NCBI RefSeq assembly: GCF_000143415.4
Contig: NW_003314342.1
Coordinates: 720,173 to 784,172, forward strand
Length of the DNA: 64,000 nt
Direction: 5' to 3'
Source of the DNA: Selaginella moellendorffii
Lineage: Eukaryota; Plantae; Lycopodiophyta
A model generated the notes under the pieces. The model did no database searches and was not told the DNA's origin. It worked only from the letters and a program-made list of their open reading frames with translations. Shown piece after piece: positions 291 through 37,722 of the stretch. Positions within the stretch are counted from its first letter, which is position 1. The number at the start of each line of letters is the position of its first letter. Both the position numbers and the translations under genes were made by a program.

Positions 291-834
291 CTGTGAAAGT
301 ACAGTGGACGATGTGGTGTTTCAGATCGCAGCGGAATGATAACTTGATGAAAGCAACAAAACCATCGAGCTCGGTCTTTGGGGATCAATAGATTATATTG
401 AAGAACTGAAGACTACCTACAGTTAAGTGCATGCAGCAACAGATCATATAAAAAATGAATGCAGAGAATAACAAATCGGGATTTCTAGGAAGTTTGTGCG
501 TGTTGTTAGTAATAATAATAATAATCATAAAAACCTGATGTTCAGCCAGTTAGAAGATTGTCTGAAATTTATGCATGTACTGATTCTTCAGCTCTTGAGC
601 AACTGATTGCTGCTGGCTCACTTTCTATATTTATCAAAGAGATTTTTTTTTAACAATAAACATCTAAGCTGCTGCAGTTAAGCCGTGACATTGTAAAGTT
701 TAAAAAGGAAAAGAATTAGAAAAGGAAAAAACAGAAAACACGAGCTTTTTACTACTACAGTTAAGTAATAACAAATCGGGATTTCTAGGGTATGCGTGCG
801 GCGCTAAGGTTTGTGTGGTGTGTGTGTCAATCTC

Positions 835-3800
835 ATGGAGTGGAAAACGTTTTTCAGGGATCCCACTTTCTGGTGGGACAACAGGTTCAAGAAGAAAAAC
901 AAGTTCTCCTCAGAGTCCTACCCGGATTTCAAACATGTTTCTACCGGAGAGAGCCTGTGGATCGCCAACAGGAAAACACCAACCTGGGTCTCTGCAAAAC
1001 TCGAGTCGCTCGCTGACCCAGCTGTAGGTAAGGCCACCACGGCCCGCTACAAATCTCAACATACCCCACCTGTAGCTGGTGATGAACCGGTGAGTTTAGG
1101 GAGGCTGATACACCGCGTGAGAGACTCAGCTGAGAGCAGATCCCTTTCTTTGGGAAAACAAGCCCATGAAGCTGTGCTCAAGAGTGATGAGCACAAAAGC
1201 AACATCTACTTGTTGACGGGATTGATCGATATGTACTGCAAGTGTGGCGAGCTTGAGGAGGCTCGCAAGATTTTCGACTCCATGGGAACCCGGAGTGTTG
1301 TGTCCTACAACGCGATCATCCAGGGCTGCGGCTCGAACGGGCAAGCTGAACTTGCTCTGGAGTACTACTCTGCCCTGAGAGCTTGTACCACCATTCAACC
1401 CAACGATCGGACACATGTCGCGGTGATCAGCGCCTGCTCCAGACTTGCTACCGAATCCAGCAAGAAGAGGGAGAGAGCTCTACGCATCGGGATGGAAGTC
1501 CATTCAATGCTGAGCAAGGAGAAGAAACAGGTAGATCTGTTCCTGGCGACTTGCCTGGTAGACATGTACTGCAAGTGTGGCGAGCTTGAGGAGGCTCGCA
1601 AGATTTTCCACTCCATGGGAACTCGGAGTGTTGTGTCCTACACCGCGATCATCCAGGGCTGCAACACGAACGGGCGAGCTGAACTTGCTCTGGAGTACTA
1701 CTCTGCCCTGAGAGCTGATAACACCATTCAACCTGACGATCGGACTCATGTCGTGGTGATCAGCGCCTGCTCCACACTTGCTACCGAATCCAGCGAGAAG
1801 AGGGAGAGAGCTCTACGCATCGGGATGGAGATCCATTCAATGCTGAGCAAGGAGAAGAAACAGCTAGATCTGTTCGTGGCGAATTGCCTGGTAGACATGT
1901 ACTGCAACTGTGGCGAGCTTGAGGAGGCTCGCAAGATTTTCCACTCCATGGGAACTCGAAGTGTTGTGTCCTACACCGCGATCATCCAGGGCTGCAACAC
2001 GAACGGGCGAGCTGAACTTGCTCTGGAGTACTACTCTGCCCTGAGAGCTCGTACCACCATTCAACCCAACGATCGGACTCATGTCGCGGTGATCAGCGCC
2101 TGCTCCACACTTGCTACCGAATCCAGCGAGAAGAGGGAGAGAGCTCTACGCATCGGGATGGAAGTCCATTCAATGCTGAGCAAGGAGAAGAAACAGGCAG
2201 ATCTGTTCCTGGCGACTTGCCTGGTAGACATGTACTGCAACTGTGGCGAGCTTGAGGAGGCTCGCAAGATTTTCCACTCCATGGGAACTCGAAGTGTTGT
2301 GTCCTACACCGCGATCATCCAGGGCTGCAACACGAACGGGCGAGCTGAACTTGCTCTGGAGTACTACTCTGCCCTGAGAGCTCGTACCACCATTCAACCC
2401 AACGATCGGACTCATGTCGCGGTGATCAGCGCCTGCTCCACACTTGCTACCGAATCCAGCGAGAAGAGGGAGAGAGCTCTACGCATCGGGATGGAAGTCC
2501 ATTCAATGCTGAGCAAGGAGAAGAAACAGGCAGATCTGTTCCTGGCGACTTGCCTGGTAGACATGTACTGCAAGTGTGGCGAGCTTGAGGAGGCTCGCAA
2601 GATTTTCCACTCCATGGGAACTCGGAGTGTTGTGTCCTACACCGCGATCATCCAGGGCTGCAACACGAATGGGCGAGCTGAACTTGCTCTGGAGTACTAC
2701 TCTGCCCTGAGAGCTGATAACACCATTCAAGCTGATGCTTGCACCTACACCTGCGTCCTTGTTGCTTGCGGGAGTGTGATGGCGATCAAGCTCGGGAGGG
2801 AGATTCACCAGCTGGCGAAGCATAAAGGGCTGCTGAAAAACAATCCAGTTCTGGGCTCCAGCCTGGTGAGCTTCTACGGCAAATGCGGCGATGTTGATTC
2901 TGCTCAGGAAGCGTTTGACGAGTGCCGAGCTCGGGACGACACGGGTCTATGGAACTCTCTCATACAGGCTTACACTCTCCAGGGCCGATCGATCGAGGCC
3001 TTGGAGCGTTTCTATTCCATGACTCAGGAGGAGGGCTGTAAAGCTGACGATGTGAGTTTTGTCTCGGTGTTGAACGCTTGCAGCCATGGTGGTCTGGTCG
3101 GGAAAGGAAGGCAGCTTCTGGATGAAATGCCCAAGCAGTATGGAGTCAAGCCACGTCTGGAGCATTATGTGTGCCTGATCGATATGCTCGGGCGAGCTAA
3201 CCTCCTCGACGAAGCTGTGAGAGTTCTCAGAGCCATGCCTTTTGAACCGGATGCAGTGGTTTGGACGTCCCTGCTCGGAGCCTGCCGGAAGTGGAAGAAT
3301 TACACGATCGGCAAACTCGCGTTTGAGCGTCTTGTGGAGATGGATCCCAAGAGCAGCACACCCTACGCATTGATGGCCAATATATTTGGAAACCTGGGGA
3401 TGCTCAGTGAAAGGGCCGCTGTTGTGGAGAGAATGAGAGGTGAAGGCAGCTTCAGGGAGCCCGAGAGAAGCTGGTGGACGGATGTTAGCTCAGGAAAAGT
3501 GCATTCTTTTTCTGTCGGGGATAAGAGTCACTCACAGAGCGACGAGATTGCGGCCAAGCTCAAGCAATTGTTGCTGAGAATGAAAGAGGAGGGGTACGCG
3601 AGCGATGTGATCAACGTTCTAAAAGACATACCTGAGGAAGAGAAAGAGGATCACCTGTGCGGCCACAGTGAGAAGCTTGCGCTGGGGTGTGCTCTGGTGA
3701 ACTCGCACCAGAAGGAAACCATCAGAATTGTGAAAAATCTCCGAGTTTGTGACGATTGCCATGCGGCCACTGCTCTCATCTCTAAGCTGGAAAAAAGGCT

Positions 3801-3873
3801 AATCATCTGCAAAGATGCCAGTCAGGTTCATGTGTTCCAGGATGGCAGATGTTCCTGTGACAACTACTTTTGA
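835..3873 (+). CDS. PLS-class PPR-E1-E2-DYW RNA-editing factor (DYW:WW-type) with an N-terminal OSB-type PDF motif
   Basis: Single-exon ORF; first ATG at 835, with an in-frame TAA at 805-807. Contains P-L-S triplets, P2-L2-S2 (..FVSVLNACSHGGLV..LEHYVCLIDMLGRA), E1 (PDAVVWTSLLGAC), PERSWWTD, the deaminase motifs HSEKLA and CDDCH, and the C-terminus HVFQDGRCSCDNYF. The N-terminus WKTFFRDPTFWWDNR..K..PDFKH..TGESLWI..P.WV..KL matches the PDF motif. Confidence 0.93.
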   Translation: MEWKTFFRDPTFWWDNRFKKKNKFSSESYPDFKHVSTGESLWIANRKTPTWVSAKLESLADPAVGKATTARYKSQHTPPVAGDEPVSLGRLIHRVRDSAESRSLSLGKQAHEAVLKSDEHKSNIYLLTGLIDMYCKCGELEEARKIFDSMGTRSVVSYNAIIQGCGSNGQAELALEYYSALRACTTIQPNDRTHVAVISACSRLATESSKKRERALRIGMEVHSMLSKEKKQVDLFLATCLVDMYCKCGELEEARKIFHSMGTRSVVSYTAIIQGCNTNGRAELALEYYSALRADNTIQPDDRTHVVVISACSTLATESSEKRERALRIGMEIHSMLSKEKKQLDLFVANCLVDMYCNCGELEEARKIFHSMGTRSVVSYTAIIQGCNTNGRAELALEYYSALRARTTIQPNDRTHVAVISACSTLATESSEKRERALRIGMEVHSMLSKEKKQADLFLATCLVDMYCNCGELEEARKIFHSMGTRSVVSYTAIIQGCNTNGRAELALEYYSALRARTTIQPNDRTHVAVISACSTLATESSEKRERALRIGMEVHSMLSKEKKQADLFLATCLVDMYCKCGELEEARKIFHSMGTRSVVSYTAIIQGCNTNGRAELALEYYSALRADNTIQADACTYTCVLVACGSVMAIKLGREIHQLAKHKGLLKNNPVLGSSLVSFYGKCGDVDSAQEAFDECRARDDTGLWNSLIQAYTLQGRSIEALERFYSMTQEEGCKADDVSFVSVLNACSHGGLVGKGRQLLDEMPKQYGVKPRLEHYVCLIDMLGRANLLDEAVRVLRAMPFEPDAVVWTSLLGACRKWKNYTIGKLAFERLVEMDPKSSTPYALMANIFGNLGMLSERAAVVERMRGEGSFREPERSWWTDVSSGKVHSFSVGDKSHSQSDEIAAKLKQLLLRMKEEGYASDVINVLKDIPEEEKEDHLCGHSEKLALGCALVNSHQKETIRIVKNLRVCDDCHAATALISKLEKRLIICKDASQVHVFQDGRCSCDNYF
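1231..2730 (+). repeat. Intragenic tandem repeat: ~4.5 near-identical 333-bp (111-aa) S-P-L triplet units
   Basis: ATGTACTGCAA(G/C)TGTGGCGAGCTTGAGGAG recurs at 1231, 1564, 1897, 2230 and 2563 (exact 333-bp period). Units 3 and 4 are identical in protein sequence. Confidence 0.97.
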
Positions 3874-5385: not shown

Positions 5386-6175
5386 CTCAGGATTATTTCG
5401 CTTTTGCAAAGCAGTTCGCAGATATTCTTGTGGAAGTCCTAAAAAGAATCCTGTTTCTCTCTAGTGTGAACTTGGTGACGGCAGAGGACTTAGCAGCAAT
5501 GGCGACAAAGGTGGCGGTGGCGTTGGCGGCGTAAATGATAGTGGAGGAGAAGATGGTGGCTGTGACGAATTTATATCCTGCGAAAACTCCCGGGAGGAGC
5601 GATGGATGCTGCTCACGATTGTCTCCTCTAGCGAGCTTAGCGGCAAGGAGATGCCAGAAGAACGTTGTAGTTCTTCATCCGCAGCGAGTGCAACGCACTG
5701 GAGAGATCACTGTCCGTGGAGATGAAAAGATGCGCTGGTGGCGGATGATCGACAGTCCACAGCACCAAAACCAGCATGGGAGTTCGATCGGAGGCCAAAT
5801 TCTTGCGAGCTGGAAGAGAAACAAAAATCACAACGATTGATCCACGAAAATCTAGCAAATCGAAAACTTACACGATGGCAAATTGTGGAGAGAAATCCCA
5901 GTGGAAGCCAACGCCTCCTGTGTGCTCCGCGAGAGCTGCCATGTATCGCCAAAAGCGTCGATCGACACTGGACCCTTGAATCCTCTGGTTCACAGCCCAG
6001 CAATCCCCACGTTCGTCGCAGGAATCCCAGCTGGGATGTCGCAGTCCTCGAAATCCCACCACACCGCCACTCTCACCGCTCGCAGCCCCGCATCACATCC
6101 ACTGCCATACAATCTTCATCCTCGACCAGCGCTGGACATTGATAGCATTGCTTAAACCCTGGATGGAAGCTTTAC

Positions 6176-7831
6176 ATGGTTGCCAAGAACATCTTTCCCC
6201 GGGATGATCACTTGGAATCATACGCTCGTCTCGTCAGGTGCTGTGGCAACGCGAAAGATCTGAGCGATGCTCGCAAGATCCACGCTTTGATCGAAGGAAC
6301 CCATTACAAGAACAACGTCTACATTGCGAATCTCCTCGTCCAAATGTATGGCAAATGCGGGAGCTCTGGCGATGCACGCAGCGTGTTTGATTCCATTCTC
6401 ACCCCCAACTCCTTTTCATGGACAATCCTGCTCCAAGCCCACATTCACAACCAGCAGCTCCACGAGGCCAAGCGCGTCTTCGATTCCATGCCCGGGAAGA
6501 ATGTAGTGACTTGGAATGCGCTTCTTTCGGCAAATGCCAAAATCGGGCAAATTCATGAAGCGAGGCTTGTTTTCGATCGAATTCCAGAGTGGGACGTTGT
6601 TTGCATGAATGCTATTGTCACTGGGTTGGCGAGATCTGGAATGATCATCCAGGCTAGAAACCAATTTGAAAACATGCCTGAGAGAGACTCTGTGTCGTGG
6701 AATGTGATTATTTCGGCATATGCTCAAGCTGGAGATTTTCTTGAAGCAAAGAAGCTGTTTGACAGAATGGAACGAGACCATGATTCTCACAAAAGACTGA
6801 GCAATCCAGTCCTATGGAACTCTATGATCGTTGCGCATGCTCAGTGCGGAGATCTTGATGGAGCACAAAAGTTCTTTGCGAGGATGGCGCAGAGAGATTG
6901 CGTGTCGTGGGCAACACTTATCAACTCTTTTGCGCAGCATGGCTGCACTAATCTAGCAAGAGACACATATGAGAGAATGCCACAGCACGATGTTATAGCG
7001 TGGACTGGAATGCTCCGAGCAAACTCCCAGTGCGGTGAAATCGATCAAGTACACAATCTCTTCGATTCAATGCCTCAAAGAAACCTTGTGTCGTGGACAG
7101 TTTTCCTAGAAACACTTTGCAATCAAGATAATTTTGCAAAAGCTAGAAGAGTGTTTGATCTGATGCCCCAGAGAGACAGCGTTCCTTGGAATGTTATGAT
7201 CACTGCATATGCCCAACGAGGGCATGTATACGAAGCAAAGTGCTTTTTTGACAGTGTAGAAGTTCCAAACGTTATCACGTGGAATTGCATGATCGGAGCG
7301 TATGGGCAAAATGGACACTTAGACGATGCTTGGGCATTGTTTAGACGCTGTTTACAGCCAAACATAGTGACCTGGAACGTTCTTATCGTGTCGTTTGCCC
7401 AGAATCTACATTGTGCTGAGTCCATTCATCTCTTTGAAGTCTTGAATCTGGAAGGGTTCAAGCCAGACGAGCTGAGTTTCATGGGCCTTTTGATCGCTTG
7501 CTGCCACCTTGGGCTGGTAATTGCTGCTAGAGATACCTTGGCTTCAATGGTTTTTGACTACGATATAAGCCCTGAGCGAGATCACTACTGCTGCTTGATC
7601 GGTGTTCTTGCGGGAGCTGGGCTCTTGGATGATGCCGAGGATCTCATCAACACAATGCCATTTGTTCCAGATGTTTCCAACTGGGGATGCTTCGTGAGTG
7701 CCTGTAAGATCCACTCTGCTGGAGTGGATAGGAGTGTTGGTGCTGCTTTCAATGCCATCGCGATGGATCCTAAAAACTCAGCACCATACGTGGATTTTGC
7801 GACAATTTTTACTGATGAGTGGTTAAACTAG
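6176..7831 (+). CDS. PLS-class PPR protein rich in short (S/SS) motifs, ending after E1/partial E2, no DYW (intact copy, unit 1)
   Basis: 551-aa single-exon ORF with ~31-aa repeats (VFDSMP..NVVTWNA..), then PDELSFMGLLIACCHLGLV, RDHYCCLIGVLAGAG and PDVSNWGCFVSAC. Confidence 0.9.
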   Translation: MVAKNIFPRDDHLESYARLVRCCGNAKDLSDARKIHALIEGTHYKNNVYIANLLVQMYGKCGSSGDARSVFDSILTPNSFSWTILLQAHIHNQQLHEAKRVFDSMPGKNVVTWNALLSANAKIGQIHEARLVFDRIPEWDVVCMNAIVTGLARSGMIIQARNQFENMPERDSVSWNVIISAYAQAGDFLEAKKLFDRMERDHDSHKRLSNPVLWNSMIVAHAQCGDLDGAQKFFARMAQRDCVSWATLINSFAQHGCTNLARDTYERMPQHDVIAWTGMLRANSQCGEIDQVHNLFDSMPQRNLVSWTVFLETLCNQDNFAKARRVFDLMPQRDSVPWNVMITAYAQRGHVYEAKCFFDSVEVPNVITWNCMIGAYGQNGHLDDAWALFRRCLQPNIVTWNVLIVSFAQNLHCAESIHLFEVLNLEGFKPDELSFMGLLIACCHLGLVIAARDTLASMVFDYDISPERDHYCCLIGVLAGAGLLDDAEDLINTMPFVPDVSNWGCFVSACKIHSAGVDRSVGAAFNAIAMDPKNSAPYVDFATIFTDEWLN

Positions 7832-8099
7832 CATTTTGGTATATTTAAATTTTTTGTGAAGCTTTTTTCAATCTAACTCTCTCGAAAGTTGTTATACCAG
7901 AATATTTTACTGCTCCTCTGCTTCAAGGAATTCTTTACCTGCTCCAAATACTTCAAAACCACTTCTAAAACGAGCTCTTGTATAATTAACTAAATCATTA
8001 ATCATTAATTAATTATGTTTAGGGCTTAAGGTTTATTCACAACATCAAGGTGGTCAAGAGCAGAAGAAATGTCCCCCCTCAGGCCTGCACAAATGCAGC

Positions 8100-9230: not shown

Positions 9231-10277
9231 AACAACAGCAGTAATTTATGTACCTCTTGTAGAATTTCTGCTATGTTGAATTATAACTTACTTTATAAAC
9301 TACTGCAGAAAAGCTGATACAGATGCACTTCTTTTGCAAATAGTCTTTAGGGCTGATCCTTTACAAACGATGTGAGGTCCTTTTAGACTTTTGAAAGAAA
9401 ATTGAAACTTTAGCTTTATAACCATCATGTGAGTTATTTAAGGTGTGAAGAGTGAAACTACTTATTATAAGTCATTTTTAGACTGTGCTTTCAATGTGTA
9501 TTATTGATTTTTTTTTCTTTAGGCTTCAAACGTACTAGAATACCTAAAGAAATACTCAAAGCTCTCAAGGCAAACATATTATTGAGCATTTAGCTGACAG
9601 TTATTTGATACAAAATTAAAAGAAGAGCATAATTATTTCATTGGTTATATAATTGACTCTTTACTATTATCAGTTAAACAAAAACGACTTTATTGTGGTA
9701 GTAATGAAATTATATATCTCTGAAAAACTAATTTTGAGAAAAATAACCTTAAAGATAATTATTAAATAACATAATAAAATGATATAAGTATAATATATAT
9801 AATCTATATAAGCTAGATTTATATATAAGCTCTTCACTTAAAAAAGAAAAACATTTTATAAAAGTAAATTTTATAATGTTTTGTAAATGACTAAAAATTG
9901 CTGATGCAACTAGTATAAACAACTAAAAACCTTTAATAGTATAATGATAATCACAAAATTGTTAGTACACTAAATTAAAGTATTAAATTAATCAAAATGT
10001 TATATTATAACATCTTAATATGCTTGAAGTATATTAGCAGCAGTAGATTGTAACAAATTCTAGATAAAGATATTTCCCACTTTTGATTCCTTAGTAAATT
10101 AAAGTTTTAAAGAAAATTTATTAAAAAACGAGTGTTTTGTAGAAAGTTTGGGTACTGCATTATTATGCCAAAAGAGGGCATCTTGGAAATGAAAGGGATT
10201 GAAGCTTGACGCACTGTTTTGCCGCCAAATCTTGTGACCTGGAGCATTCTTATCATGTCGACTGCCATCTCTTCAAC

Positions 10278-13090
<2,813 letters not shown>

Positions 13091-13376
13091 CGCTCCAGGG
13101 AAATCTTCTCCCCACGCGGCTCCATTTTAAAGGCTAAAGCGCGGGCGGAAGCTCCAACCACGAGCAAAGGCCACTCCGCCAGGCGATCAATAAGTCTCGT
13201 CCATTTCTATCGGATCTCGCATCATATCACCAAAATCCAAAGAAAGAACCTCGCACGCATCATTCCCGCCAAATGCAGGCAACTTAAAACACTAAACCCC
13301 AGCTAGGGCTTTGTTTTACCGCATTAAAACAAAGACGAGTGTTAAATCACTCGCTCTCTCTCTCTCTCGTGTCTAG

Positions 13377-13651
13377 CTAGCTTCTATGACGCCTTTGCTG
13401 TGAAGGGGCCGCAACGCTAGCCTTCTTATAATGCAAAGTTTTTTGATGAGCAGCTTGATTAGGATGTACCCACTGTCCATAAAAAGAATTAGCAGCTGCG
13501 GTTCCACCACCGCCACCACCACCACCGCCACCACCACCACCACCACCGCCACTACCAGCGACACTACTAGCAGAAGGCGGTGGCGGAGGCCCTGGCGGTA
13601 GAGGTGGCCGCAAGACTGGAAATCCTCCGCCTGGATTCGACGAGCTATCCT
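13377..13651 (-). pseudogene. Duplicated 3' end of the SPOC gene (Pro/Gly-rich tail plus stop); also at 23700-23959 and 37082-37341
   Basis: Near-identical to 46419-46684 (..PVLRPPLPPGPPPPPSASS..GGG..RRHRS*), truncated at the array junction. Confidence 0.93.
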
Positions 13652-14051
13652 CGACGATGGCTTACAAGAGCAGGGATTAAGCTTCTTTGCGAGTGGAAGC
13701 CGAGTCTACTGGAATCCCTCTAGCAGTGAAAGCGGATCTTGTTAGTACAACGATTGATCCACGAAAATCCAGCAAAGAGAAAAGGTCGAGAACTTACACG
13801 ATGGCAAATGGTGGAGAGAAATCCCAGTGGAAGCCAACGCCTCCTGTGTGCTGCATGAAAGCTGCCATGTATCGCCATCGATCGAGGAGACTGGACCCTT
13901 GAATCCTCTGGTTCACCCAGCGATGCCCACATTCCATCCCATCCACTGTCATCCTCGATCAGGGCTGGATCCTGCAAGCCCTGGCGCGGTGGTGCGCCAG
14001 AGATCCCCGAGACATTGATAGCATAGCTTAAACCCTGGATGGAAGCTTTAC

Positions 14052-15695
14052 ATGGTTGCCAAGAACATCTTTCGCCGGGATGATCACTTGGAATCATACG
14101 CTTGTCTCGTCAGGTGCTGTGGCAACGCGAAATATCTGAGCGATGCTCGGAAGATCCACGCTTTGATCGAAGGAACCCATTACAAGAACAACGTCTACAT
14201 TGCGAATCTCCTCGTCCAAATCTATGGCAAATGCGGGAGCTCTGGCGATGCACGCAGCGTGTTTGATTCCATTCTCACCGCCAACTCCTTTTCATGGAAA
14301 ATCCTGCTCCAAGCCCACATTCACAACCAGCAGCTCCACGAGGCCAAGCGCGTCTTCGATTCCATGCCCGGGAAGAATGTAGTGACTTGGAATGTGCTTC
14401 TTTCGGCAAATGCCAAAATCGGGCAAATTCATGAAGCGAGGCTTGTTTTCGATCGAATTCCAGAGTGGGACGTTGTTTGCATGAATGCTATTGTCACTGG
14501 GTTTGCGAAAGCTGGAATGATCAGCCAGGCTAGAAACCAATTTGAAAACATGCCTGAGAGAGACTCTGTGTCGTGGAATGTGATTATTTCGGCATATGCT
14601 CAAGCTGGAGATTTTCTTGAAGAAAAGAAGCTGTTTGATAGAATGGAACGAGATCATGATTCTCACAAAAGACTGAGCAATCCAGTTCTATGGAACTCTA
14701 TGATCGTTGCGCATGCCCAGTGCGGAGATCTTGATGGAGCACGAAAGTACTTTGCGAGGATGACGCAGAGAGATTGCGTGTCGTGGGTAACACTTATCAA
14801 CTCCTTTGCGCAGCATGGCTGCACTAATTTAGCAAGATAAACATATGAGAGAATGCCACAGCACGATGTTATAGCGTGGACTGGAATGCTCCGAGCAAAC
14901 TCCCAGTGCGGTGAAATCGATCAAGTACACAATCTCTTTGATTCAATGCCTCAAAGAAACCTAGTGTCGTGGACAGTTTTCCTAGCAACACTTTGAAATC
15001 AAGATAATCTTGCAAAAGCTAGAAGAGTGTTTGATCTGATGCCCCAGAGAGACAGCGTTCCTTGGAATGTTATGATCACTGCATATGCCCAACGAGGGCA
15101 TGTAAACGAAGCAAAGTGCTTTTTTGACAGTGTAGAAGTTCCAAACATTATCACGTGGAATTGCATGATCGGAGCGTATGGGCAAAATGGACACTTAGAC
15201 GATGCTTGGGCATTGTTTAGACGCTGTTTACAGCCAAACATAGTGACCTGGAACGTTCTTATCGTGTCGTTTGCCCAGAATCTACATTGTGCTGAGTCCA
15301 TTCATCTCTTTGACGTCTTGAATCTGGAAGGATTCAAGCCAGACGAGCTGAGTTTCATGGGCCTTTTGATTGCTTGCTGCCACCTTGGGCTGGTAATTGC
15401 TGCTAGAGATACCTTGGCTTCAATGGTTTTTGACTACGGTATAAGTCCTGAGCGAGATCACTACTGCTGCTTGATCGGTGTTCTTGCGGGAGCTGGGCTC
15501 TTGGATGATGCTGAGGATCTCATCAACACAATGCCATTTGTTCCAGATGTTTCCAACTGGGGATGCTTTGTGAGTGCCTGTAAGATCCACTCTGTTGGAG
15601 TGGATAGGAGTGTTGGTGCTGCTTGCAATGCCATCGCGATGGATCCTAAAAACTCAGCGCCATACGACAATTTTTACTGATGAGTGGTTAAACTA
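14052..15695 (+). pseudogene. PLS-PPR pseudogene (unit 2)
   Basis: Close copy of 6176-7831 with TAA at 14838-14840, TGA at 14994-14996 and a 10-bp deletion near the 3' end (frameshifted to PYDNFY*). Confidence 0.92.
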
Positions 15696-16210
15696 GCATT
15701 TTGGTATATTTAAATTTTTTGTGAAGCTTTTTTCAATCTAACTCTCTCGAAAGTTGTTATACCAGAATATTTTACTGCTCCTGTAGTGTTGGAGCTCTGT
15801 TTCAAGGAATTCTTTACCTGCTCCAAATACTTCAAAACCACTTCTAAAACGAGCTCTTTTATAGTTAATTAAATCATTAATAATTAATTAATTATATTTA
15901 GGGTTTAAGGTCTATTCAAGAGCACAACATGGAGAAGAAATGAAGTGTTATATTGCCCAAATAGATTCTATATGATTTTGAAATTGTGTATTTGAATAGT
16001 AGAATTTCAAGTCTGCAGCAAATGGATATTGCTAGTCCACACAACAGTGAAGGCAAGATCCAGAACAACATTGTTGTATCGCCCCCAAACCAATTAGGAA
16101 GCGATAGTGGTGGATAGTGTGGTAGTACCAGCTGCTGTCTTCCAAGTCATAAACCATCTTCGTTGTGCAGCTGATTCATGCAGAAGTAGCATGCACCTGT
16201 GGAGATGAAG

Positions 16211-18663: not shown

Positions 18664-19698
18664 GTACTGTTTAGTATATAATATTTAGTCTTTTAACTAA
18701 AAAGGAAGAAAAATATACTCTAACTTCATAATGTCTATATTTGATGGTCACATAACTCAATTTTATTTTGCATTTGAATACCTTAAAAAGCCCATTTAAA
18801 TGGATTTCATCATAGTTTTATTCTAGAACCTGATAAATATAGTAATCTTGAAAATTACAATAAATCACATATTCTCAAGGTCATTAGTGTATATGTAAAA
18901 TTCATAACTCTAATGAATTATTAAATTTATTTCTTTAATAAATTTAAAATATTTAATTAAAATTTTAAGGTATTATTATTAAATATTTTAGAAAAATAAA
19001 AAATAACCTAATATATATAATCTATATAAGCTGGAAAGTTAAATGACCTCTTTAAAATATCAATAGTAGGAACTTAATAAATAAAAAATATTTTGTGTAA
19101 AATAACTTTTATAATTTTTAATAAATAGGTAAGAATTGCTGATGCAACCAGTTTAAACAGCTAAAAACCTTTAAAACAATGATGATAATCATAAAGTGGT
19201 TAGTGCATTAAGTTAAAGTATTGCAATTAATCAAAAAACTAGGTCAGAGCATCATAATATATTGAAATATACTAGAGGTAGTAAATTGTAATAAATTTAA
19301 ATAAATAATATGTATTAATACTAAAAAAATCACTTATATTTAAGAAAAATAATAAAATGATTAGAATGATATTTTAGAAGAATATTTAATTTTTTTTATA
19401 TGGGTGGCAGGATAAACCTAGAATATGGTTGGATATTCTGGGATATTTTACCATCTAATAGTTAATATTTATTTAAATTAGTCTTTTACTTATAAACATA
19501 TTTATAATTTATAAACACTTCCTAGTATATTCTACTTCATTCTACCATTGAAAGTTGTAATAAAATTAGAATTAAATTTATGTAAGTAACTATCTTAATT
19601 AATAGTGTTTAAAAAATTTAATAAGATAATTATTGATTATATTATCATTAAAAATTAATAAATAAACAAGCAAGTTGCTTGTTACATGAATAGCTTAA

Positions 19699-20057
19699 GG
19701 TACACAAGCTTTCATTCATTTTTGGTTTGAAAGTTCTAGAGTTTTTTTAACTTTCCTACAGCAAGCTATAATACAAGCTCCAAATAAGAAACTTTTACTT
19801 GAGGATTCTTTACATCCGGATCTGGTCTGCATCATGGAAAGCCATCAATTTACTCTGGAACTTCCCTCTCGCTGGTGCTGCTCAAATCCAGGTATCCGCG
19901 TTGGAGCCATCAAGTCGGCTCTTGGTACCAAAGACTATTCAACACTAGCTCTGGCGAGTTATGGATATTGGCCAGCTTAAGTAAGCTTACTTCCATGTTA
20001 AAATCTCAATGTTTCATCTAACACAAACCTCTAGGTGTTTGGCCCGCATCCAAGAGC
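19699..20057 (+). pseudogene. Inverted, scrambled, deletion-riddled subtilase relic; also ~33117-33474 and ~42505-42824
   Basis: Plus-strand blocks match the subtilase sense strand: intron GGTACACAAGCTTTCA.T.CATTTTTGGTTTGA, TCTGGAACTTCC (SGTS), TCAAATCCAGG, GCCATCAAGTCGGCTCT (AIKSAL), GGTACCAAAGA, then AAGCTTACTTCC..AG|GTGTTTGGCC..TCCAAGAGC (G|VWP.SKS). Confidence 0.75.
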
Positions 20058-20591
20058 ATAACGAGTGGACAAGGAAGAATCAAGTAGCAAATTAGTGACG
20101 GCTCCATCAGAGTCAAAAACCATTGAAGCAAAGGATTCTTTGCCCAAGGTGGGGATGAAGAGGACTAACTTAGTATATAAGATCAGGCGTTGGCATAGAG
20201 TTCTCGTCTCTCCTCCTCCTCCTGCATCACCACACTCATTGAGTTACAGATCAACCCCAAGCACAAGCCATCGAACAGTGCTGGGATCTTATGTTTTGTT
20301 GCTACAATTTGACAGGAAATTCTCAAGCATGGTGTTGTACCGTGGACTAGAAATGCTCAGAGCAAACCCCAATGCAGTGAATTTGATCAATTGAAAGCTC
20401 TTTTATCCAACACCTCGATAAGATCCACTTTGGAGAGCTAAACGAATGTTTTGTAGAAAGTTTGGGTACTGCATTATTATGCCGAAAGAGGGCATCTTGG
20501 AAATGAAAGGGATTGAAGCTTGACGCATTGTTTTGCCGCCAAATCTTGTGACCTGGAACATTCTTATCATGTCGTCTGCCATCTCTTCAAC

Positions 20592-23405
<2,814 letters not shown>

Positions 23406-24065
23406 CGCTCCAGGAAAATCTTCTCCCCATGCGGCTCCATTTTAAAGGCTAAAGCGCGGGCGGAAGGTCCAACCACGGGCAAAGGCCACTCCGCCAGCCG
23501 ATCAATAAGTCTCGTCCATTTCTATCGGATCACGCATCATATCACCAAAATCCAAAGAAAGAACCTCGCACGCATCATTCCCGCCAAATGCAGGCAACTT
23601 AAAACACTAAACCCCAGCTAGGGCTTTGTTTTACCGCATTAAAACAAAGACTAGACTTACAAGGAGTGTTAAATCACTCGCTCTCTCTCTCGTGTCTAGC
23701 TAGCTTCTATGACGCCTTTGCTGTGAAGGGGCCGCAACGCTAGCCTTCTTATAATGCAAAGTTTTTTGATGAGCAGCTTGATTAGGATGTACCCACTGTC
23801 CATAAGAAGAATTAGCAGCTGCGGTTCCACCACCACCACCACCACCACCACCACCGCCACTACCAGCGACACTACTAGCAGAAGGCGGTGGCGGAGGCCC
23901 TGGCGGTAGAGGTGGCCGCAAGACTGGAAATCCTCCGCCTGGATTCGACGAGCTATCCTCGACGATGGCTTACAAGAGCAGGGATTACAAGCTTCTTTGC
24001 GAGTGGAAGCCGAGTCTCTCTAGCAGTGAAAGCGGATCTTGTGATTGATCCACGAAAATCCAGCA

Positions 24066-24875
24066 AAGATCTGAGCGATGCTCGCAAGATCCACGCTTTG
24101 ATCGAAGGAACCCATTACAAGAACAACATCTACATTGCGAATCTACATTGCGAAAGTTTTCCTAGCAACACTTTGAAATCAAGATAATCTTGCAAAAGCT
24201 AGAAGAGTGTTTGATCTGATGCCCCAGAGAGACAGCGTTCCTTGGAATGTTATGATCACTGCATATGCCCAACGAGGGCATGTAAACGAAGCAAAGTGCT
24301 TTTTTGACAGTGTAGAAGTTCCAAACGTTATCACGTGGAATTGCACGATCGGAGCGTATGGGCAAAATGGACACTTAGACGATGCTTTGGCATTGTTTAG
24401 ACGCTGTTTACAGCCAAACATAGTGACCTGGAACGTTCTTATCGTGTCGTTTGCCCAGAATCTACATTGTGCTGAGTCCATTCATCTCTTTGACGTCTTG
24501 AATCTGGAAGGATTCAAGCCAGACGAGCTGAGTTTCATGGGCCTTTTGATTGCTTGCTGCCACCTTGGGCTGGTAATTGCTGCTAGAGATACCTTGGCTT
24601 CAATGGTTTTTGACTACGATATAAGCCCTGAGCGAGATCACTACTGCTGCTTGATCGGTGTTCTTGCGGGAGCTGGGCTCTTGGATGATGCTGAGGATCT
24701 CATCAACACAATGCCATTTGTTCCAGATGTTTCCAACTGGGGATGCTTCGTGAGTGCCTGTAAGATCCACTCTGTTGGAGTGGATAGGAGTGTTGGTGCT
24801 GCTTGCAATGCCATCGCGATGGATCCTAAAAACTCAGCGCCATACGACAATTTTTACTGATGAGTGGTTAAACTA
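24066..24875 (+). pseudogene. PLS-PPR pseudogene (unit 3), with two large deletions
   Basis: Start region deleted (junction CAGCAAAGA|TCTGAGCGATG), a second deletion of ~770 bp near 24150, the shared TGA at 24174-24176 and the shared 3' 10-bp deletion. Confidence 0.9.
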
Positions 24876-26513
24876 GCATTTTGGTATATTTAAATTTTTT
24901 GTGAAGCTTTTTTCAATCTAACTCTCTCGAAAGTTGTCATACCAGAATATTTTACTGCTCCTGTAGTGTTGGAGCTCTGTTTCAAGGAATTCTTTACCTG
25001 CTCCAAATACTTCAAAACCACTTCTAAAACGAGCTCTTTTAAAGTTAATTAAATCATTAATCATTAATAATTAATTAATTGTGTTTAGGGTTTAAGGTCT
25101 ATTCACACAACATCAAGGTGGAGAAGAAATGAGGTGTTATTTGATTGCCCAAATAGATTCTATATGATTTTGATATTGTGTATTCTAATAATAGAATTTC
25201 AAGTTGGGGGAGGGAGCTGCAGCAAATGGATATTGCTAGTCCACACAACAATGAAGGCAAGATCCAGAACAACATTGTTGTATCGCCCCCTAGTGCAAAC
25301 TAAACCAGTTAGGAAGCGATAGTGGTGGATAGTGTGGTAGTACCAGTTGCTGTCGTCCAAGTCATAAACCATCTTCCTTGTGCAGCTGATTCATGCAGAA
25401 GTAGCATGCACCTGTGGAGATGAAGAACCTATCGCCACCCAGCTGTTGAACACTATGGCAGTACATTGGATGATCAAGCTCCTACCACTCTGATCCTGGT
25501 CCTTGTCCCAAACCAAGAGTTTGATTATGTCATCTTTATAATCCTATACAACCTGCCCTTGTACCAGTGGAAGCAAACCAACATCTGGAGTACTGTTGGA
25601 ATTGGAATGGCTTTGCACAAATTGAGCCTTACATTGTATCTTTTCTGCATCATATACATCTTTCCAAGCTCTGAAATCGTGACAAGCTGGGGGTCATGGT
25701 CCTTGTTAGGAAGTGGTTGCCATGAATTTGTGAGGGAGAAGTAGACCTTGTGCTTGCAAACCACATATAGAGCTAATCCATAATAAGTTCCATTGAGTGG
25801 GAGGATCCTTGAGCTAAAATAAGACGTGAGACAAGTGATCCATATGGCTTGTTCCCCGTCGCAAAGACTCCAAGCAAGGACGTGATCCTCTTCACCTCAA
25901 GTATATAATAAAGAAAAAATTAGGTTCATACTTTTAGTTACCACGAAAGCATGACAAACCCATCTTTAGCTGTGTGGCATGCTAAAGCAAGAGTTAAGAC
26001 CCAACTATTCTGGGCACTTAAATACCTGTGTATGCACGAACATCTCTATAGGAGACTGTTTTCAACTTGAAGGATGAGAACACCCCCTATACTGTGAACC
26101 AGAAAAAAATCTCTTTCTTTGTTCACAACCTTGTGACCTTTTCCTTGAGACCACCATGCTCGTCCCATTGTCCTATGAGCACTACCATATACTCTAGACC
26201 ATCATATCCATGAGTTGCAAGGCCATGCCAAGGATATTTCTTTGCTCATCACCTAGTGAATAACAACAGCTACATAGCCTTTAGAGCTAATCCTTTACAA
26301 ACAAATTGGTTAGACTTTTGAAAGAAAATTGAAACTTTAGCTTTATAACCATCTTGTGTTATTTGAGATATAAGTCATTTTTAGACTGTGCTTTCATAAC
26401 ACATTTTTTTTAATTATTGAATTTTTTTTTAGGATTCAAACGTACTAGATTACCTAACAAATACTCAAAGCTCTCAAAGCATAGGCAAACTTATTATTGA
26501 GCATTTAGCTGAC

Positions 26514-27423: not shown

Positions 27424-30400
27424 TCTCTTGTAGATAGGCCGGGATCTGGAGGAACGTCAGGAGGAGGCATCGGCAGATCTGTAGACGGTATTAACTGCTT
27501 CTGATCCCTTTGTATGAAGCGTTTTAACCGCTGTACTGCACAATCTCCGGAGGATCGGCCTGCTGAACGTCATGCCGAACCTCATAAACTTGTTCCAACT
27601 TGCCGCAACACCCGATATGGTCCTTTCCACTGCGCAAGAAGCCCCTTAGATAAACCACGTACCGTAAGATGGGGAAAACGGACTAACACCAAATCATCCA
27701 CTTTGTACTCCGCAGGTGGATGATGATGGGAATTGTAGCGCCGTTGTTGTCCCACCTGTATGCGGCCTAAGTGTTCAGCAGACTCTGCTCGGACAAGTGG
27801 AAGAATGCTTGTCAAATATTGATCCCATGACCTAGCATCAGAAGCTCGTGGCAATCGCGAAGGTAAACCCAGCTCTATTGGTAATATTGGATCATGACCA
27901 TATAGAAGTTTATATGGTGAAGCACCAACAGAACTCTGCACCCCTGTGACATAGGCATACCGAAGAGACGGCAAATAACCATCCCAATCCGAATGCTGAA
28001 AGTTCATATACTTCGCAATCATCCCTTTGAATGTCCGAACGAGCCGTTCCACCAGACTGTCTGATTGTGGATGATAAGCACTCGTAAAAGTGTGGCGTAT
28101 CCCCAACCGAGATGTCAAAACATGAAATACCTCAGCCATAAATGCAGGACCATTATCCGAAAGAATCCGCTCTGGACAAGAATGCTGGAACACCACTCGA
28201 TTGAGGAGGAAGTATCCAACAGCAATTGCAGAGGCACTAGCAAGAGCACCAACTTCCACCCAACGAGTCAAGTAGTCAGAAGCAATAATAACATACTCAT
28301 TGCCAGCAGTCGATCATGGAAAAGGTCCCATAAGATCAAATGCTACCAACTCAAACGGACGGGAAACTGCAATTGACTCCAACCGTCCTTCCACAGCACA
28401 AGGGGGAGTATTACGAACTTGGCACCAAATGCAGCTATGCACATACCGGATAATATCACGTCGCATCTCTGGCCAATAGAAAGACCTGCGCAGTTTCTCG
28501 GTGATACGACGGTGTCCCATATGCCCACCTAGAACAGGAGAATCATGGTAGACATGGAGAAACCGCGGAATAAACACTGAAGGCACCACCAGCCATAAAT
28601 GATCATCAGGATCTGTCCCCACAAAATAAAGAAGGCCATCTTCAAGGCGATATTGAGAATGTAAATGCCGGAAAGGCAAGTCATCAGCAAGTGATGCAGG
28701 ATTCTCAAACCCATCTCGAAGCCTTTGAATCCACGGCTCAATTTTTTGAGCCTCACAAACCTCATCAAGAGAAGGTAGATCTTGCTCTGCGCCCTGTGGA
28801 CACTGAACGTCAAGGACAGCAACCGCTGACGGCATAGAATCCTCATCTAGAAAATCCACAGATGTTGGAACAACAGGTTCATCAGAAACATGAGAAGTGA
28901 GTGGAGAAGGAAGAGGAGCTCGAGAAAAGGCATCAGCATCAGCCATAGAACTCCCTGGGCGATGAACAACATCGAAATCATATATCTGAAGCTTCAAAGC
29001 CCATCGAGCCGTACGACCAACCAGGTTCTTCCACTTCAATAATGAAGTAACAGCAGCATGGTCACCTTCAAGTAACGTCCGAGAACCATGTAGATATGCA
29101 TGAAGTTTCTCGAAACCCCAGACTGCTGCTAAACACTCCTTCTCTGTCGTAGAGTAGTTCATCTCTGCTGGTTGTAATGTACGGCTTATGTATGCAATGG
29201 GATGGCACTGACCAGGCACACTCAAGCTCTCTTGCATCAACACACCTCCAAGACCAATGTTAGAAGCATTCACGCGCAAAATAAAAGGTCGAGTGTAGTC
29301 AGGATATGCCAAAACCGGAGGAGTCGTCAATAGCTCTTTGAGATTCACGAACGCCTGCTCACAATCCGGAGACCAGATGAAAGATGACGTTGATGACTTC
29401 AACAATGCTCGCAATGGTGTAGTGCGATCGGAAAGATGATCCACAAAACGATTGAGATACTGCACGTTACCCAAAAAACGCTGCACATCATTCACACACT
29501 TCGAAGTAGGGAACTTTAGAACAGCCACAAGTTTGTCAGGATCAACTTGCAAACCCTCACGAGAAATACGGTACCCAAGATAAGTTGTGTCCTTGGACCC
29601 AAACACGCACTTTGACCGCTTCAATTTTAAACCAACGTCGCGTAGCCGATCCAACACTTTACAAACATCACAAACGTGCTCCTCCCACGTCCCCTCCGAG
29701 TGGATCAAGACATCATCAATGAAGTCAGCCGTCACCTCCGGCATATCGCAAAGAACCTCGTCCATCATCCGCTGAAAAGTTACTGGAGCATTGTTCAAAC
29801 CAAACGGCATCACCAAGAACTCATACAAACCAAATGGTGTACGAAAAGCAGTCTTAGGAATATCTTCTTCGGCCATCGGTACTTGCCAATACCCAGAAGC
29901 AAGATCTAGCTTGGTGAACCAACGACTTCGCCCCAGACGATCCAAGAGATCAGCAGTGTGAGGAAGAGGGTACACGTCCGGGATCGTCACTTCATTTAAC
30001 GGACGATAGTCGATACAGAAATGAATACTCCCATCAGGCTTCGTCACAAGATGAGGTTCACATGCCCAAGGACTCCGCGACTTTCAAATAACACCCTTCT
30101 CCAACATCTCCTTGACGTTTGCATGTAAAATCTTGATCTCCTTGGGTGACCGACAACGAACAGGAACCTTGATTGGACAAGCATCCCCGGTTGGAATGGG
30201 ATGACGTGTGGCAATCTTGGCCCCAGATGATAGGTCAAATTCAAAGAGATCAGAATACTCCTTCATGAGCTGGTCAACAGCTGCAACACAAAAATCATCG
30301 GAGGGATCGGAAAAGGGAAGAGCAGAACAAGATGGAAACACAAGAGGAAATAGTGGGGGAACAAAAGTAATGGAAGCAGAGGTAAAAGTAGAGGGACGAA

Positions 30401-30902
30401 GAGGTACGGAAGTGAGAGGAATGAATGAAACATAAGGAAGTATGAGACAAAGGGGAGAAGCCTCAAAGTCACACTTGGCATGATTGTGCTGCAACCAATC
30501 CATACCAAGAATGAGGTCAAAAGCTTGACTCAGCACCACCCGCAACGACTGCAACTCAAGCTCGAGATCGCCCACGCGCACAACCAGGTCCGCCTCATCT
30601 CGTGCACATGCATGTGTACGGCCGTTGTCATAAAGAATGAAAACTGGATCCACCGCACGACGCAAGTGCAGACAACAACGTGTGGCAACAGGTCGAGCAA
30701 TAGAAGATAAACTCGAACCTGTATCAACCAACACGGAGAGAAGAATAGGAGACCTCTTGTTAAAAAAACGAGCTTGGAAAGTAAACACTGGATGAACCGG
30801 TGCCGAGTGAACCCCTTGATGATACTCCCGAAAGAAAGATGGAGGGGTCACTAACTTATTCGCACAAGGTCCCTCCATTACTCATGCGACTCCTTGTTTC
30901 CC
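27424..30902 (-). pseudogene. pol: Gypsy pol (protease, RT, RNase H, integrase with GPY/F) interrupted by stops and a late frameshift
   Basis: LVDTGSS; FCIDYRPLN, KLDLASGYWQ, MPFGLNNAP, FIDD; NYSTTEKE; H..H..CIWC, FDLMGPF, SDNG, WKGPY. In-frame TGA at 30882, 30084 and 28314; 2-bp deletion near 27592. Confidence 0.9.
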
Positions 30903-33986: not shown

Positions 33987-36787
<2,801 letters not shown>

Positions 36788-37722
36788 CGCTCCAGGGAAA
36801 TCTTCTCCCCATGCGGCTCCATTTTAAAGGCTAAAGCGCGGGCGGAAGCTCCAACCACGGGCAAAGGCCACTCCGCCAGCCGATCAATAAGTCTCGTCCA
36901 TTTCTATCGGATCACGCATCATATCACCAAAATCCAAAGAAAGAACCTCGCACGCATCATTCCCGCCAAATGCAGGCAACTTAAAACACTAAACCCCAGC
37001 TAGGGCTTTGTTTTACCGCATTAAAACAAAGACTAGACTTACAAGGAGTGTTAAATCACTCGCTCTCTCTCTCGTGTCTAGCTAGCTTCTATGACGCCTT
37101 TGCTGTGAAGGGGCCGCAACGCTAGCCTTCTTATAATGCAACGTTTTTTGATGAGCAGCTTGATTAGGATGTACCCACTGTCCATAAGAAGAATTAGCAG
37201 CTGCGGTTCCACCACCACCACCACCACCACCACCACCGCCACTACCAGCGACACTACTAGCAGAAGGCGGTGGCGGAGGCCCTGGCGGTAGAGGTGGCCG
37301 CAAGACTGGAAATCCTCCGCCTGGATTCGACGAGCTATCCTCGACGATGGCTTACAAGAGCAGGGATTAAGCTTCTTTGCGAGTGGAAGCCGAGTCTCTC
37401 TAGCAGTGAAAGCGGATCTTGTGATTGATCCACGAAAATCCAGCAAAGAGAAAAGGTCGAGAACTTACACGATGGCAAATGGTGGAGAGAAATCCCAGTG
37501 GAAGCCAACGCCTCCTGTGTGCTGCATGAAAGCTGCCATGTATCGCCATCGATCGAGGAGACTGGACCCTTGAATCCTCTGGTTCACCCAGCGATGCCCA
37601 CATTCCATCCCATCCACTGTCATCCTCGATCAGGGCTGGATCCTGCAAGCCCTGGCGCGGTGGTGCGCCAGAGATCCCCGAGACATTGATAGCATAGCTT
37701 AAACCCTGGATGGAAGCTTTAC

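What the first reader, a model, noticed from the sequence alone, without database searches (positions are those of the whole stretch)
835..3873. OSB-type ssDNA-binding PDF motif fused to a complete PPR-DYW cytidine deaminase
Seen: the first ~58 aa (MEWKTFFRDPTFWWDNRFKKKNKFSSESYPDFKHVSTGESLWIANRKTPTWVSAKL) are in the same uninterrupted ORF as a PLS tract and a DYW domain with intact HxE and CxxC. Established: W..FF..P..WWDNR..K..PDFKH..TGE.LW...P.WV...L is the PDF motif of plant organellar single-stranded DNA-binding (OSB) proteins, where it confers ssDNA binding; PPR-DYW proteins are sequence-specific C-to-U RNA editors. Inference: one polypeptide joins an ssDNA-binding module, a programmable reader and a deaminase. 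It could tether editing to nucleoids or R-loops co-transcriptionally, add non-specific single-strand affinity, or even act on ssDNA like a natural base editor. I do not recall a functional description of this architecture but cannot exclude earlier mention.
Basis: partly seen in the sequence, partly recalled or inferred. Interest (0 to 1): 0.9.

Follow-up and report, generated by a model that had tools for sequence, protein, structure and literature searches.

The report
PPR-DYW editor with OSB-type PDF domain
This spikemoss-type gene encodes an organelle RNA-editing-type enzyme (PPR repeats plus a DYW cytidine deaminase) that really does begin with the small "PDF" single-stranded-DNA-binding domain of plant OSB proteins, a combination I found in lycophytes and a fern but in no paper; what it does is untested.

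Summary
Observation confirmed. Window 835-3873(+) is one uninterrupted 1012-codon ORF: PDF-like N-terminus, PLS-type PPR tract, E, E+ and a DYW deaminase with HSE, CDDCH and CSC intact.

An HMM built only from 219 PDF motifs of 101 SSB-domain (OSB-type) proteins hits residues 3-60 at 65 bits, E 1e-19. It is the only hit in the window. All ten near-invariant PDF positions are present.

AlphaFold models give a compact alpha/beta domain (residues 1-59) and a disordered linker (61-83), with PPR helices from residue 88. The fold has no PDB relative.

PDF+PPR also occurs in another Selaginella gene, in Diphasiastrum, in the fern Adiantum, and in three ESM Atlas PPR/DYW clusters. It is old, and it goes unannotated because Pfam has no PDF model. 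I found no paper describing it. The scan already reported this architecture on at least eight other pieces of this genome.

This copy belongs to a young multi-copy family whose 111-aa PPR triplet array varies in unit number. Some copies are broken, and public models splice the array out. An out-of-frame upstream ATG lies at 792. RNA-like contigs carry sister-copy variants, so expression of this copy is unproven.

Function is inferred: most likely an RNA editor with an accessory single-strand binder. DNA editing is unlikely.

The parts
835..3873 (+). Complete CDS, 1012 aa plus stop: PDF - linker - PLS PPR tract - E - E+ - DYW
835..1011 (+). PDF domain (aa 1-59), OSB-type. W3, W13, D15, R17, K20, P30, D31, F32, W42 and P49 are all present. 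It has a 4-residue loop insertion (aa ~23-26) relative to other PPR-linked PDFs.
   Evidence: OSB-only HMM: 65.5 bits, E 1.3e-19. Alignment A1 of 115 motifs. AF2 pLDDT 86 with elements H2-8, E13-15, H17-21, E32-34, H50-60. Alignment A2.
1012..1095 (+). Linker (aa 60-87), unconserved and predicted disordered
   Evidence: AF2 of aa 1-330: residues 61-83 have pLDDT<50. No conservation in A2.
1096..3297 (+). PLS-class PPR tract (aa 88-821)
   Evidence: Pfam PPR, PPR_1, PPR_2 and PPR_3. Helical hairpins from aa 88.
1231..2730 (+). Tandem array inside the PPR tract: 4.5 copies of a 333-bp unit, 96% identical. Each unit encodes one S-P-L triplet of 111 aa (31+36+44).
   Evidence: TRF; unit comparison
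3298..3582 (+). E motif (aa 822-880) and E+ motif (aa 889-916), including a diverged PG box (PERSWW, aa 876-881)
   Evidence: Pfam PF20431 34 bits, PF20430 27.7 bits
3592..3870 (+). DYW cytidine deaminase domain. HSE at nt 3664-3672, CDDCH at 3748-3762, CSC at 3850-3858. The C-terminus reads NYF instead of DYW.
   Evidence: Pfam PF14432 105 bits. Full-length alignment to 9kfx (E 3e-61) and 7o4e (E 1e-29).
792..1016 (+). Out-of-frame upstream ATG opening a 74-codon ORF that overlaps the start of the main ORF. In sister locus L001 the same ATG is in frame and adds 17 aa.

Best explanation
This is a nuclear gene of Selaginella (closest public DNA: S. moellendorffii). It encodes a PLS-class PPR-E-E+-DYW protein, the type that performs site-specific C-to-U editing of organellar RNA. 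Its first 59 residues are a true homolog of the PDF domain of organellar ssDNA-binding (OSB) proteins. Shown: the PDF is a separately folding small alpha/beta module. It is joined by a disordered linker of about 25 residues to the N-terminal end of the PPR solenoid. Inferred: by the known parallel PPR-RNA polarity, that end faces the 5' side of the bound RNA, so the deaminase lies at the opposite, 3' end. Most likely mechanism, also inferred: the PPR tract reads the RNA and the DYW domain deaminates the target C in RNA. The PDF then acts as a sequence-independent single-strand nucleic-acid clamp. It either adds affinity upstream of the PPR footprint or holds the editor at single-stranded DNA or nascent transcripts. 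That would be an in-cis helper in lineages said to lack the MORF/RIP helpers of seed plants. This copy is one member of a young, copy-number-variable paralog family, and its own activity is not established.
For: Architecture: an intact ORF with PPR, E, E+ and DYW. The DYW domain aligns over its full length with solved RNA-editing DYW domains and keeps its catalytic and zinc ligands.

PDF homology: 488 phmmer hits, including named OSB1 and algal SSB+PDF proteins. The OSB-only HMM gives E 1.3e-19. All ten near-invariant positions are kept.

Fold: the domain model has pLDDT 86. In the 330-aa model the linker 61-83 has pLDDT<50 and PPR helices start at residue 88. The same fold is found at the N-termini of three streptophyte PPR/DYW clusters and one SSB cluster in the ESM Atlas, at TM 0.75-0.85.

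Conservation in the PPR context: 15 PDF positions (W3, P10, W13, W14, D15, R17, K20, P30, D31, F32, H34, L41, P49, W51, V52) are invariant across PPR-linked PDFs of Selaginella, Diphasiastrum, Adiantum and one protein of unknown origin (P0023). The linker is not conserved. PPR-linked PDFs cluster on the motif tree more than in any of 500 label shuffles.

Biochemistry from the literature: the PDF motif is sufficient for ssDNA binding in AtOSB1 (PMC6963530), and OSB1/2 prefer ssDNA over dsDNA or RNA (PMC4166229).

Transcription of sister copies: RNA-like contigs cover 761/828-1260 contiguously, with no cover of 1-760.

Weak constraint: dN/dS is about 0.3 between paralogs in the C-terminal 380 codons.
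Against: No experiment links a PPR-borne PDF to any nucleic acid. In OSBs the reported preference is for ssDNA, not RNA. The PDF starts at residue 2-3, so there is no N-terminal presequence and organellar import is unexplained. For this copy in particular: an out-of-frame upstream ATG lies at 792. The contigs of all four runs carry sister-copy letters at 908 and 1058, so its own transcription is not shown. Paralogs differ by dS of only 0.03-0.045, so an intact ORF says little about selection. Other family copies have a truncated or frameshifted PDF. A 96%-identical PPR triplet array is unusual for a fixed editing factor. The MORF-absence argument comes from my own knowledge and was not checked here.
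Confidence: 0.55

Rival explanations
1. Nucleoid or R-loop tether: the PDF binds organellar ssDNA, as in OSBs, and places the editor on the displaced strand or at transcribing DNA. Editing would then be co-transcriptional, with RNA still the substrate.
For: Reviews report that the OSB PDF prefers ssDNA over RNA (PMC4166229, PMC6963530). The flexible linker would allow the PDF to reach a neighbouring strand.
Against: There are no localisation or binding data. PPR-linked PDFs form a partly separate cluster and might have changed specificity. The window-family PDF carries a 4-residue insertion in a loop.
Confidence: 0.2
2. Natural ssDNA base editor: the PDF and PPR tract position the DYW deaminase on single-stranded organellar DNA, and C is deaminated in DNA.
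For: Only the presence of an ssDNA-binding-type module next to a cytidine deaminase.
Against: The DYW domain is canonical and aligns end to end with RNA-editing DYW domains. E and E+ motifs typical of RNA editors are present. The PDF sits at the end of the protein opposite to the deaminase. No paper found reports DNA deamination by a DYW domain.
Confidence: 0.05
3. The PDF here is not a nucleic-acid binder. It would be a protein-interaction, oligomerisation or import module reused from OSBs.
For: AtOSB2 is a tetramer (PMC6963530). The PDF occupies the place of a transit peptide in three independent proteins: this one, P0094 and Adiantum P0090. PDF motifs also appear in gene models with a kinesin (P0032) or annotated as an ICR2-like protein (P0027), which may be fused models.
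Against: The residues that are near-invariant in ssDNA-binding OSB PDFs are all kept. Diphasiastrum P0146 and P0023 have 80- and 34-residue leaders in front of the PDF, so the PDF is not itself a presequence there.
Confidence: 0.15
4. This copy is a redundant, possibly silent young duplicate on its way to decay. The architecture is real, but this locus contributes nothing.
For: There is an out-of-frame upstream ATG. Only sister-copy variants are seen in contigs. Family copies L003 and L004 have damaged PDF and/or DYW regions. Divergence is too small for the open frame to prove selection.
Against: The ORF is fully intact over 1012 codons, as are L001 (1029 aa) and L002 (1234 aa). dN/dS is about 0.3 in the tail. 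Contigs drop minor variants, so absence is not shown.
Confidence: 0.25

Closest known systems
PLS-class PPR-DYW RNA editing factors (e.g. Physcomitrium PPR56/PPR65, Arabidopsis OTP86; solved DYW domains 7o4e, 7w86; synthetic PPR-DYW 9kfx)
   Same: It has a PLS PPR tract, E and E+ motifs, and a DYW deaminase with HxE, CxDCH and terminal CxC. The gene is intronless and lies in a plant with massive organellar editing.
   Different: It carries an N-terminal PDF domain in place of a presequence. Its PPR tract is a near-identical tandem array of S-P-L triplets. The PG box is diverged (PERSWW) and the terminus reads NYF.
[quoted passage not shown]
   Same: It shares the ~55-residue PDF domain with all near-invariant residues, and the same predicted fold (TM 0.85 to an SSB/OSB cluster).
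   Different: It has no OB-fold/SSB-like domain. The PDF is single and N-terminal rather than one to several copies at the C-terminus. The partner domains are an RNA reader and a deaminase.
Trans-acting helpers of seed-plant editosomes (MORF/RIP, ORRM RRM proteins, OZ1)
   Same: The idea is the same: a non-PPR nucleic-acid or protein-binding helper assists a PPR editor.
   Different: Those helpers are separate polypeptides with unrelated folds. Here the helper would be fused in cis. This analogy is inference from my own knowledge and was not tested.

Membership tests
PLS-class PPR-DYW editing factors | Array of P/L/S-type pentatricopeptide repeats | tested here: met
   Pfam PPR_2 240 bits, PPR 213 bits, PPR_1 146 bits. 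S (31 aa), P (36 aa) and L (44 aa) units read from the repeat.
PLS-class PPR-DYW editing factors | E1/E2 (E, E+) motifs between the PPR tract and the deaminase | tested here: met
   PF20431 at 34 bits and PF20430 at 27.7 bits, both above cut-off
PLS-class PPR-DYW editing factors | DYW deaminase with HxE and CxxCH zinc/catalytic signature and C-terminal CxC | tested here: met
   PF14432 at 105 bits. HSE, CDDCH and CSC align with 9kfx and 7o4e. The terminal triplet is NYF.
PLS-class PPR-DYW editing factors | Import into mitochondria or plastids | tested here: inconclusive
   No presequence is possible upstream of the PDF (stop at 805-807, no acceptor). No predictor or localisation data were available.
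PLS-class PPR-DYW editing factors | Editing of a defined organellar cytidine | not testable with these tools
   Organelle genomes and editomes of the host could not be searched here.
OSB (organellar ssDNA-binding) proteins | One or more PDF motifs | tested here: met
   OSB-only HMM: 65.5 bits, E 1.3e-19. phmmer hits to named OSB1.
OSB (organellar ssDNA-binding) proteins | Central OB-fold/SSB-like domain N-terminal to the PDF | tested here: not met
   No SSB (PF00436) hit in the ORF. The PDF starts at residue 2-3. This is therefore not an OSB; only the module is shared.
OSB (organellar ssDNA-binding) proteins | High-affinity ssDNA binding by the PDF | not testable with these tools
   Known for AtOSB1/2 from reviews. 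Not measurable here.

The most novel reading that the evidence does not exclude
The PDF gives a programmable PPR-DYW deaminase affinity for single-stranded DNA. Members of this old lycophyte/fern family would then work at organellar nucleoids, either editing nascent RNA on the R-loop or, at the extreme, deaminating C in the displaced DNA strand. The extreme case would be a natural programmable ssDNA base editor.
Probability: 0.07. Interest if true: 0.92.

Novelty: new variant of a known kind. Interest (0 to 1): 0.6.

Why it matters
PPR-DYW proteins are the only known stand-alone, programmable C-to-U RNA editors, and they are being engineered as tools. An unnoticed accessory domain that has stayed fused to them in both lycophytes and ferns suggests a built-in way to boost or localise substrate engagement. 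The domain is taken from the organellar ssDNA-binding machinery. It may help explain how early-diverging land plants handle thousands of editing sites without the seed-plant helper proteins. It also gives a directly testable link between organellar DNA maintenance factors and RNA editing. On the practical side, the domain is invisible to Pfam-based and PPR-specific annotation. The most recent OSB family survey selected only proteins with PDF plus an OB fold and never mentions PPR. A simple PDF HMM would recover a whole hidden subfamily.

Tried and rejected
- Pfam on aa 1-100 gave no family at E<=1.
- The ESM Atlas feature search with aa 1-70 gave no usable hit.
- The search for homologous proteins restricted to residues 1-62, with a 300-aa and with the full-length query, found only near-identical Selaginella models because of its word index.
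- A profile made of the full protein plus PDF pieces returned ordinary PPR proteins. None of those 117 carried a PDF when scanned with the OSB HMM. This does serve as a control: the PDF is not a general feature of PPR proteins, including about a dozen other S. moellendorffii ones.
- Fold searches of the PDF model found no relative: PDB Foldseek best E 1.8, VIA-align wide best Z 2.5, BFVD best E 4.6.
- The primary OSB paper (Zaegel 2006, PMC1785405) is not held, so PDF biochemistry is cited from reviews.
- Sphagnum PDF-bearing partial models gave only a sub-threshold PPR hit, so I do not claim mosses.
- Read laying offered only Logan contigs of runs whose RNA status is a guess. They show sister-copy letters and cannot prove or exclude transcription of this copy.
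- An upstream coding exon with a transit peptide was considered and rejected on sequence grounds.
Full report
**Observation.** The window holds one uninterrupted ORF from ATG 835 to TGA 3871-3873, 1012 codons long. Pfam finds many PPR repeats, an E motif (aa 822-880), an E+ motif (889-916) and a DYW_deaminase domain (920-1011, 105 bits). It finds nothing for the first 100 residues, because it has no PDF model. The C-terminal 216 residues align end to end with a synthetic PPR-DYW (9kfx, E 3e-61) and with the OTP86 DYW domain (7o4e, E 1e-29). HSE, CDDCH and the terminal CSC are conserved, the PG box is diverged (PERSWW), and the last three residues are NYF.

**Is the N-terminus a PDF motif?** phmmer with aa 1-70 against 1.84 billion representative proteins gave 488 hits at E<=1e-3 and 123 at E<=1e-10. 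Most hits carry 2-13 matched stretches. One of them, P0059, is named by NCBI 'protein OSB1, mitochondrial-like' (Populus, E 4e-17). P0126 (Spirogloea) and P0148 (Chara) combine a Pfam SSB domain with the motif.

I built an HMM from 219 motifs of 101 proteins that have an SSB-like domain, with no PPR-linked sequence included. It scores the window ORF at 65.5 bits, E 1.3e-19, over model positions 1-52 of 53. It hits nothing else among 845 six-frame segments of the window. In an alignment of 115 diverse PDF motifs, the ten near-invariant positions (W3, W13, D15, R17, K20, P30, D31, F32, W42, P49) are all present in the window protein.

**Fold.** With that alignment, AlphaFold2 gives a confident small alpha/beta domain (pLDDT 86; H2-8, E13-15, H17-21, E32-34, H50-60). 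The domain has no relative among solved structures: Foldseek best E 1.8, VIA-align wide best Z 2.5. BFVD gave nothing either.

Against the ESM Atlas, the model matches three groups:
- the N-termini of three streptophyte PPR/DYW clusters (127, 57 and 63 members; TM 0.75-0.83);
- an SSB (OSB) cluster (TM 0.85);
- some phage protein clusters, more weakly (TM 0.5-0.66). This is only a lead.

A model of aa 1-330 keeps the PDF fold, has a low-confidence linker (61-83, pLDDT<50) and starts PPR hairpins at residue 88.

**Start of the protein.** The reading frame has a stop at 805-807, and there is no AG between 808 and 835, so no upstream exon can add a presequence. The PDF helix begins at residue 2. 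An ATG at 792 is out of frame and opens a 74-codon overlapping ORF. In sister locus L001 that ATG is in frame, because of a 10-nt insertion, and adds 17 residues. In L002 the only in-frame start upstream of MEWK is a GTG 14 codons earlier, and the first ATG in that frame is the MEWK codon. The conserved start is therefore MEWK.

Selaginella P0094 and Adiantum P0090 also have only 5-8 residues before the PDF. Diphasiastrum P0146 and P0023 have leaders of 80 and 34 residues. How the Selaginella proteins would reach organelles is unexplained.

**Distribution of the architecture.** I confirmed PDF plus PPR in the following:
- S. moellendorffii XP_024517303 (P0094, 910 aa);
- a Diphasiastrum complanatum gene with two PDFs, a PPR tract and an E motif (the P0146 cluster);
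- Adiantum capillus-veneris KAI5061374 (P0090, two PDFs);
- a 1371-aa protein from a Logan assembly with three PDFs (P0023).

Across these proteins 15 PDF positions are invariant, while the linker is not conserved. On a weakly resolved tree of motifs, the PPR-linked PDFs need 5 label changes against a mean of 8.8 in shuffles, and none of 500 shuffles was as low. A single origin is not excluded. None of 117 ordinary PPR proteins from many plants carries a PDF, and these include about a dozen from S. moellendorffii. Sphagnum evidence stayed below threshold.

**This copy and its family.** The nearest public DNA is S. moellendorffii GCA_000143415.2.
- Locus L001 (GL377592.1) has an uninterrupted 1029-aa ORF.
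- Locus L002 (GL377582.1) has a 1234-aa ORF with two more 111-aa units.
- Both are about 95% identical to the window in nucleotides across gene and flanks.
- NCBI models P0001 and P0177 (497 and 566 aa) remove the arrays. In P0001, which I mapped, they go as in-frame GT..AG 'introns', and a 117-nt piece of PPR coding sequence is removed as well.
- The exact 1012-aa product is not in the 15-billion-protein collection.
- L003 lacks the first ~42 codons of the PDF. L004 holds two head-to-head copies. The plus-strand copy has a frameshifted PDF, and its gene model (P0002) lacks a normal deaminase motif.

Outside the array the three intact copies differ by dS 0.03-0.045, with dN/dS about 0.3 in the last 380 codons. 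The first 132 codons have too few changes to test.

**The array.** Positions 1231-2730 hold 4.5 copies of a 333-bp unit at 96% identity. Each unit encodes one S-P-L triplet, and units 3 and 4 are identical in protein. Across 12 full units from the three loci, 30 of 111 positions vary in amino acid and 8 vary only synonymously. Five of the six canonical fifth/last code positions vary (hypergeometric P 0.005, though units are not independent). Three of these show balanced N/T or N/D alternation. This fits recombination among a few unit types that differ in predicted base specificity.

**Transcription.** Three runs whose RNA status is only a guess have no contig over 1-760. They do have high-depth contigs running contiguously from 761 or 828 to 1260, with no joints. 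A low-depth DNA-like run covers nearly everything. All four runs carry T at 908 and C at 1058, which are the letters of L001 and L002. The upstream loose ends match L001 or yet another copy. A contiguous transcript across the PDF-PPR junction is therefore supported for sister copies, not for the window copy.

**Literature.** No paper in the searchable library combines 'PDF motif' with DYW, and the other term combinations gave nothing relevant. The 2026 survey of OSB evolution selected only proteins with both PDF and OB-fold domains and never mentions PPR (PMC13393729). It notes insertions in PDF positions 19-30, which is the loop where the window family has its 4-residue insertion. Reviews state that the PDF is sufficient for ssDNA binding in AtOSB1 and that OSB1/2 prefer ssDNA to dsDNA or RNA (PMC6963530, PMC4166229, PMC6451138). 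The primary paper could not be read.

**Interpretation.** What is shown is a genuine, independently folding OSB-type PDF domain, flexibly tethered to the N-terminal end of a canonical PPR-E-E+-DYW protein. The architecture is conserved in two lycophyte orders and a fern. What is inferred is that the protein is an RNA editor and that the PDF adds sequence-independent single-strand binding or nucleoid tethering. DNA deamination is possible in principle, but nothing in the deaminase domain supports it. The protein fails the OSB membership test because it has no OB fold, and it passes every sequence-level test for PPR-DYW editors.

**Earlier notes of this scan.** They report the same architecture on at least eight other pieces of this genome and reach the same reading. 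I re-derived the homology, the distribution and the literature gap independently. New here are the OSB-only HMM test, the two structure models, the Atlas matches, the paralog family with array copy-number variation, and the copy-specific transcript caveat.

Noticed in passing
window 1231-2730; L002:3001-6702: The PPR tract is a tandem array of 333-bp S-P-L triplet units. The window and L001 have 4.5 units and L002 has 6.5. Amino-acid variation among 12 units hits 5 of the 6 canonical RNA-code positions (P 0.005).
   Followed up: partly
L001:3001-6090, L002:3001-6705: NCBI gene models (P0001 497 aa, P0177 566 aa) remove the repeat arrays. In P0001, which I mapped, the array goes as an in-frame GT..AG intron and a 117-nt piece of PPR coding sequence is removed too. 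The loci hold uninterrupted ORFs of 1029 and 1234 aa, so the public proteins are probably truncated artefacts.
   Followed up: partly
window 792-1016: An out-of-frame upstream ATG opens a 74-codon ORF that overlaps the main start. A GT-microsatellite and a 10-nt indel just upstream of the start differ between paralogs and put this ATG in frame only in L001.
   Followed up: partly
window 6135-8039, 14011-15918, 37682-39590 (also 24152-25121): A second PPR ORF without a PDF (6176-7831, 551 aa) is repeated three to four times at about 96% identity. It lies inside larger segmental repeats (10126-16049 = 33835-39722; 19308-24069 = 32706-37449; 33156-37341 = 42506-46684).
   Followed up: partly
window 27499-32209 (-) and 57369-62170 (+): A Ty3/gypsy-type retrotransposon with gag, protease, RT, RNase H and integrase ORFs at 28314-31768(-), and a copy of it at 82-85% identity in inverted orientation.
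   Followed up: no
window 48045-49712 (-): A 555-aa ORF with a TFIIS central domain. The neighbouring 456-aa ORF at 46419-47789(-) has no Pfam match.
   Followed up: no
PDF model m6e51e5bb0952 (window 835-1029): In the ESM Atlas the PDF fold also resembles unannotated phage (Uroviricota) protein clusters (TM 0.60-0.66). One further cluster carries Rad52_Rad22 in 58% of its members (TM 0.51). This is a weak lead on the origin of the plant PDF domain, and BFVD did not confirm it.
   Followed up: partly
P0032 (Coptis chinensis), P0027 (Striga hermonthica), P0003 (Kingdonia uniflora): PDF motifs occur in gene models that also hold a kinesin motor (P0032) or are annotated as an ICR2-like protein (P0027; no Pfam domain found), each with three PDFs, and in a 1160-aa protein with 13 PDFs. 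These may be fused gene models or real expansions.
   Followed up: no
L004:1-1700 (-) and L004:3001-7150 (+); L003:2003-5596: In the S. moellendorffii v1 assembly, further family copies lie head to head. One has a frameshifted PDF and a gene model (P0002) that lacks a normal deaminase motif. Another copy lacks the first ~42 PDF codons. This looks like birth-and-death turnover in the family.
   Followed up: partly
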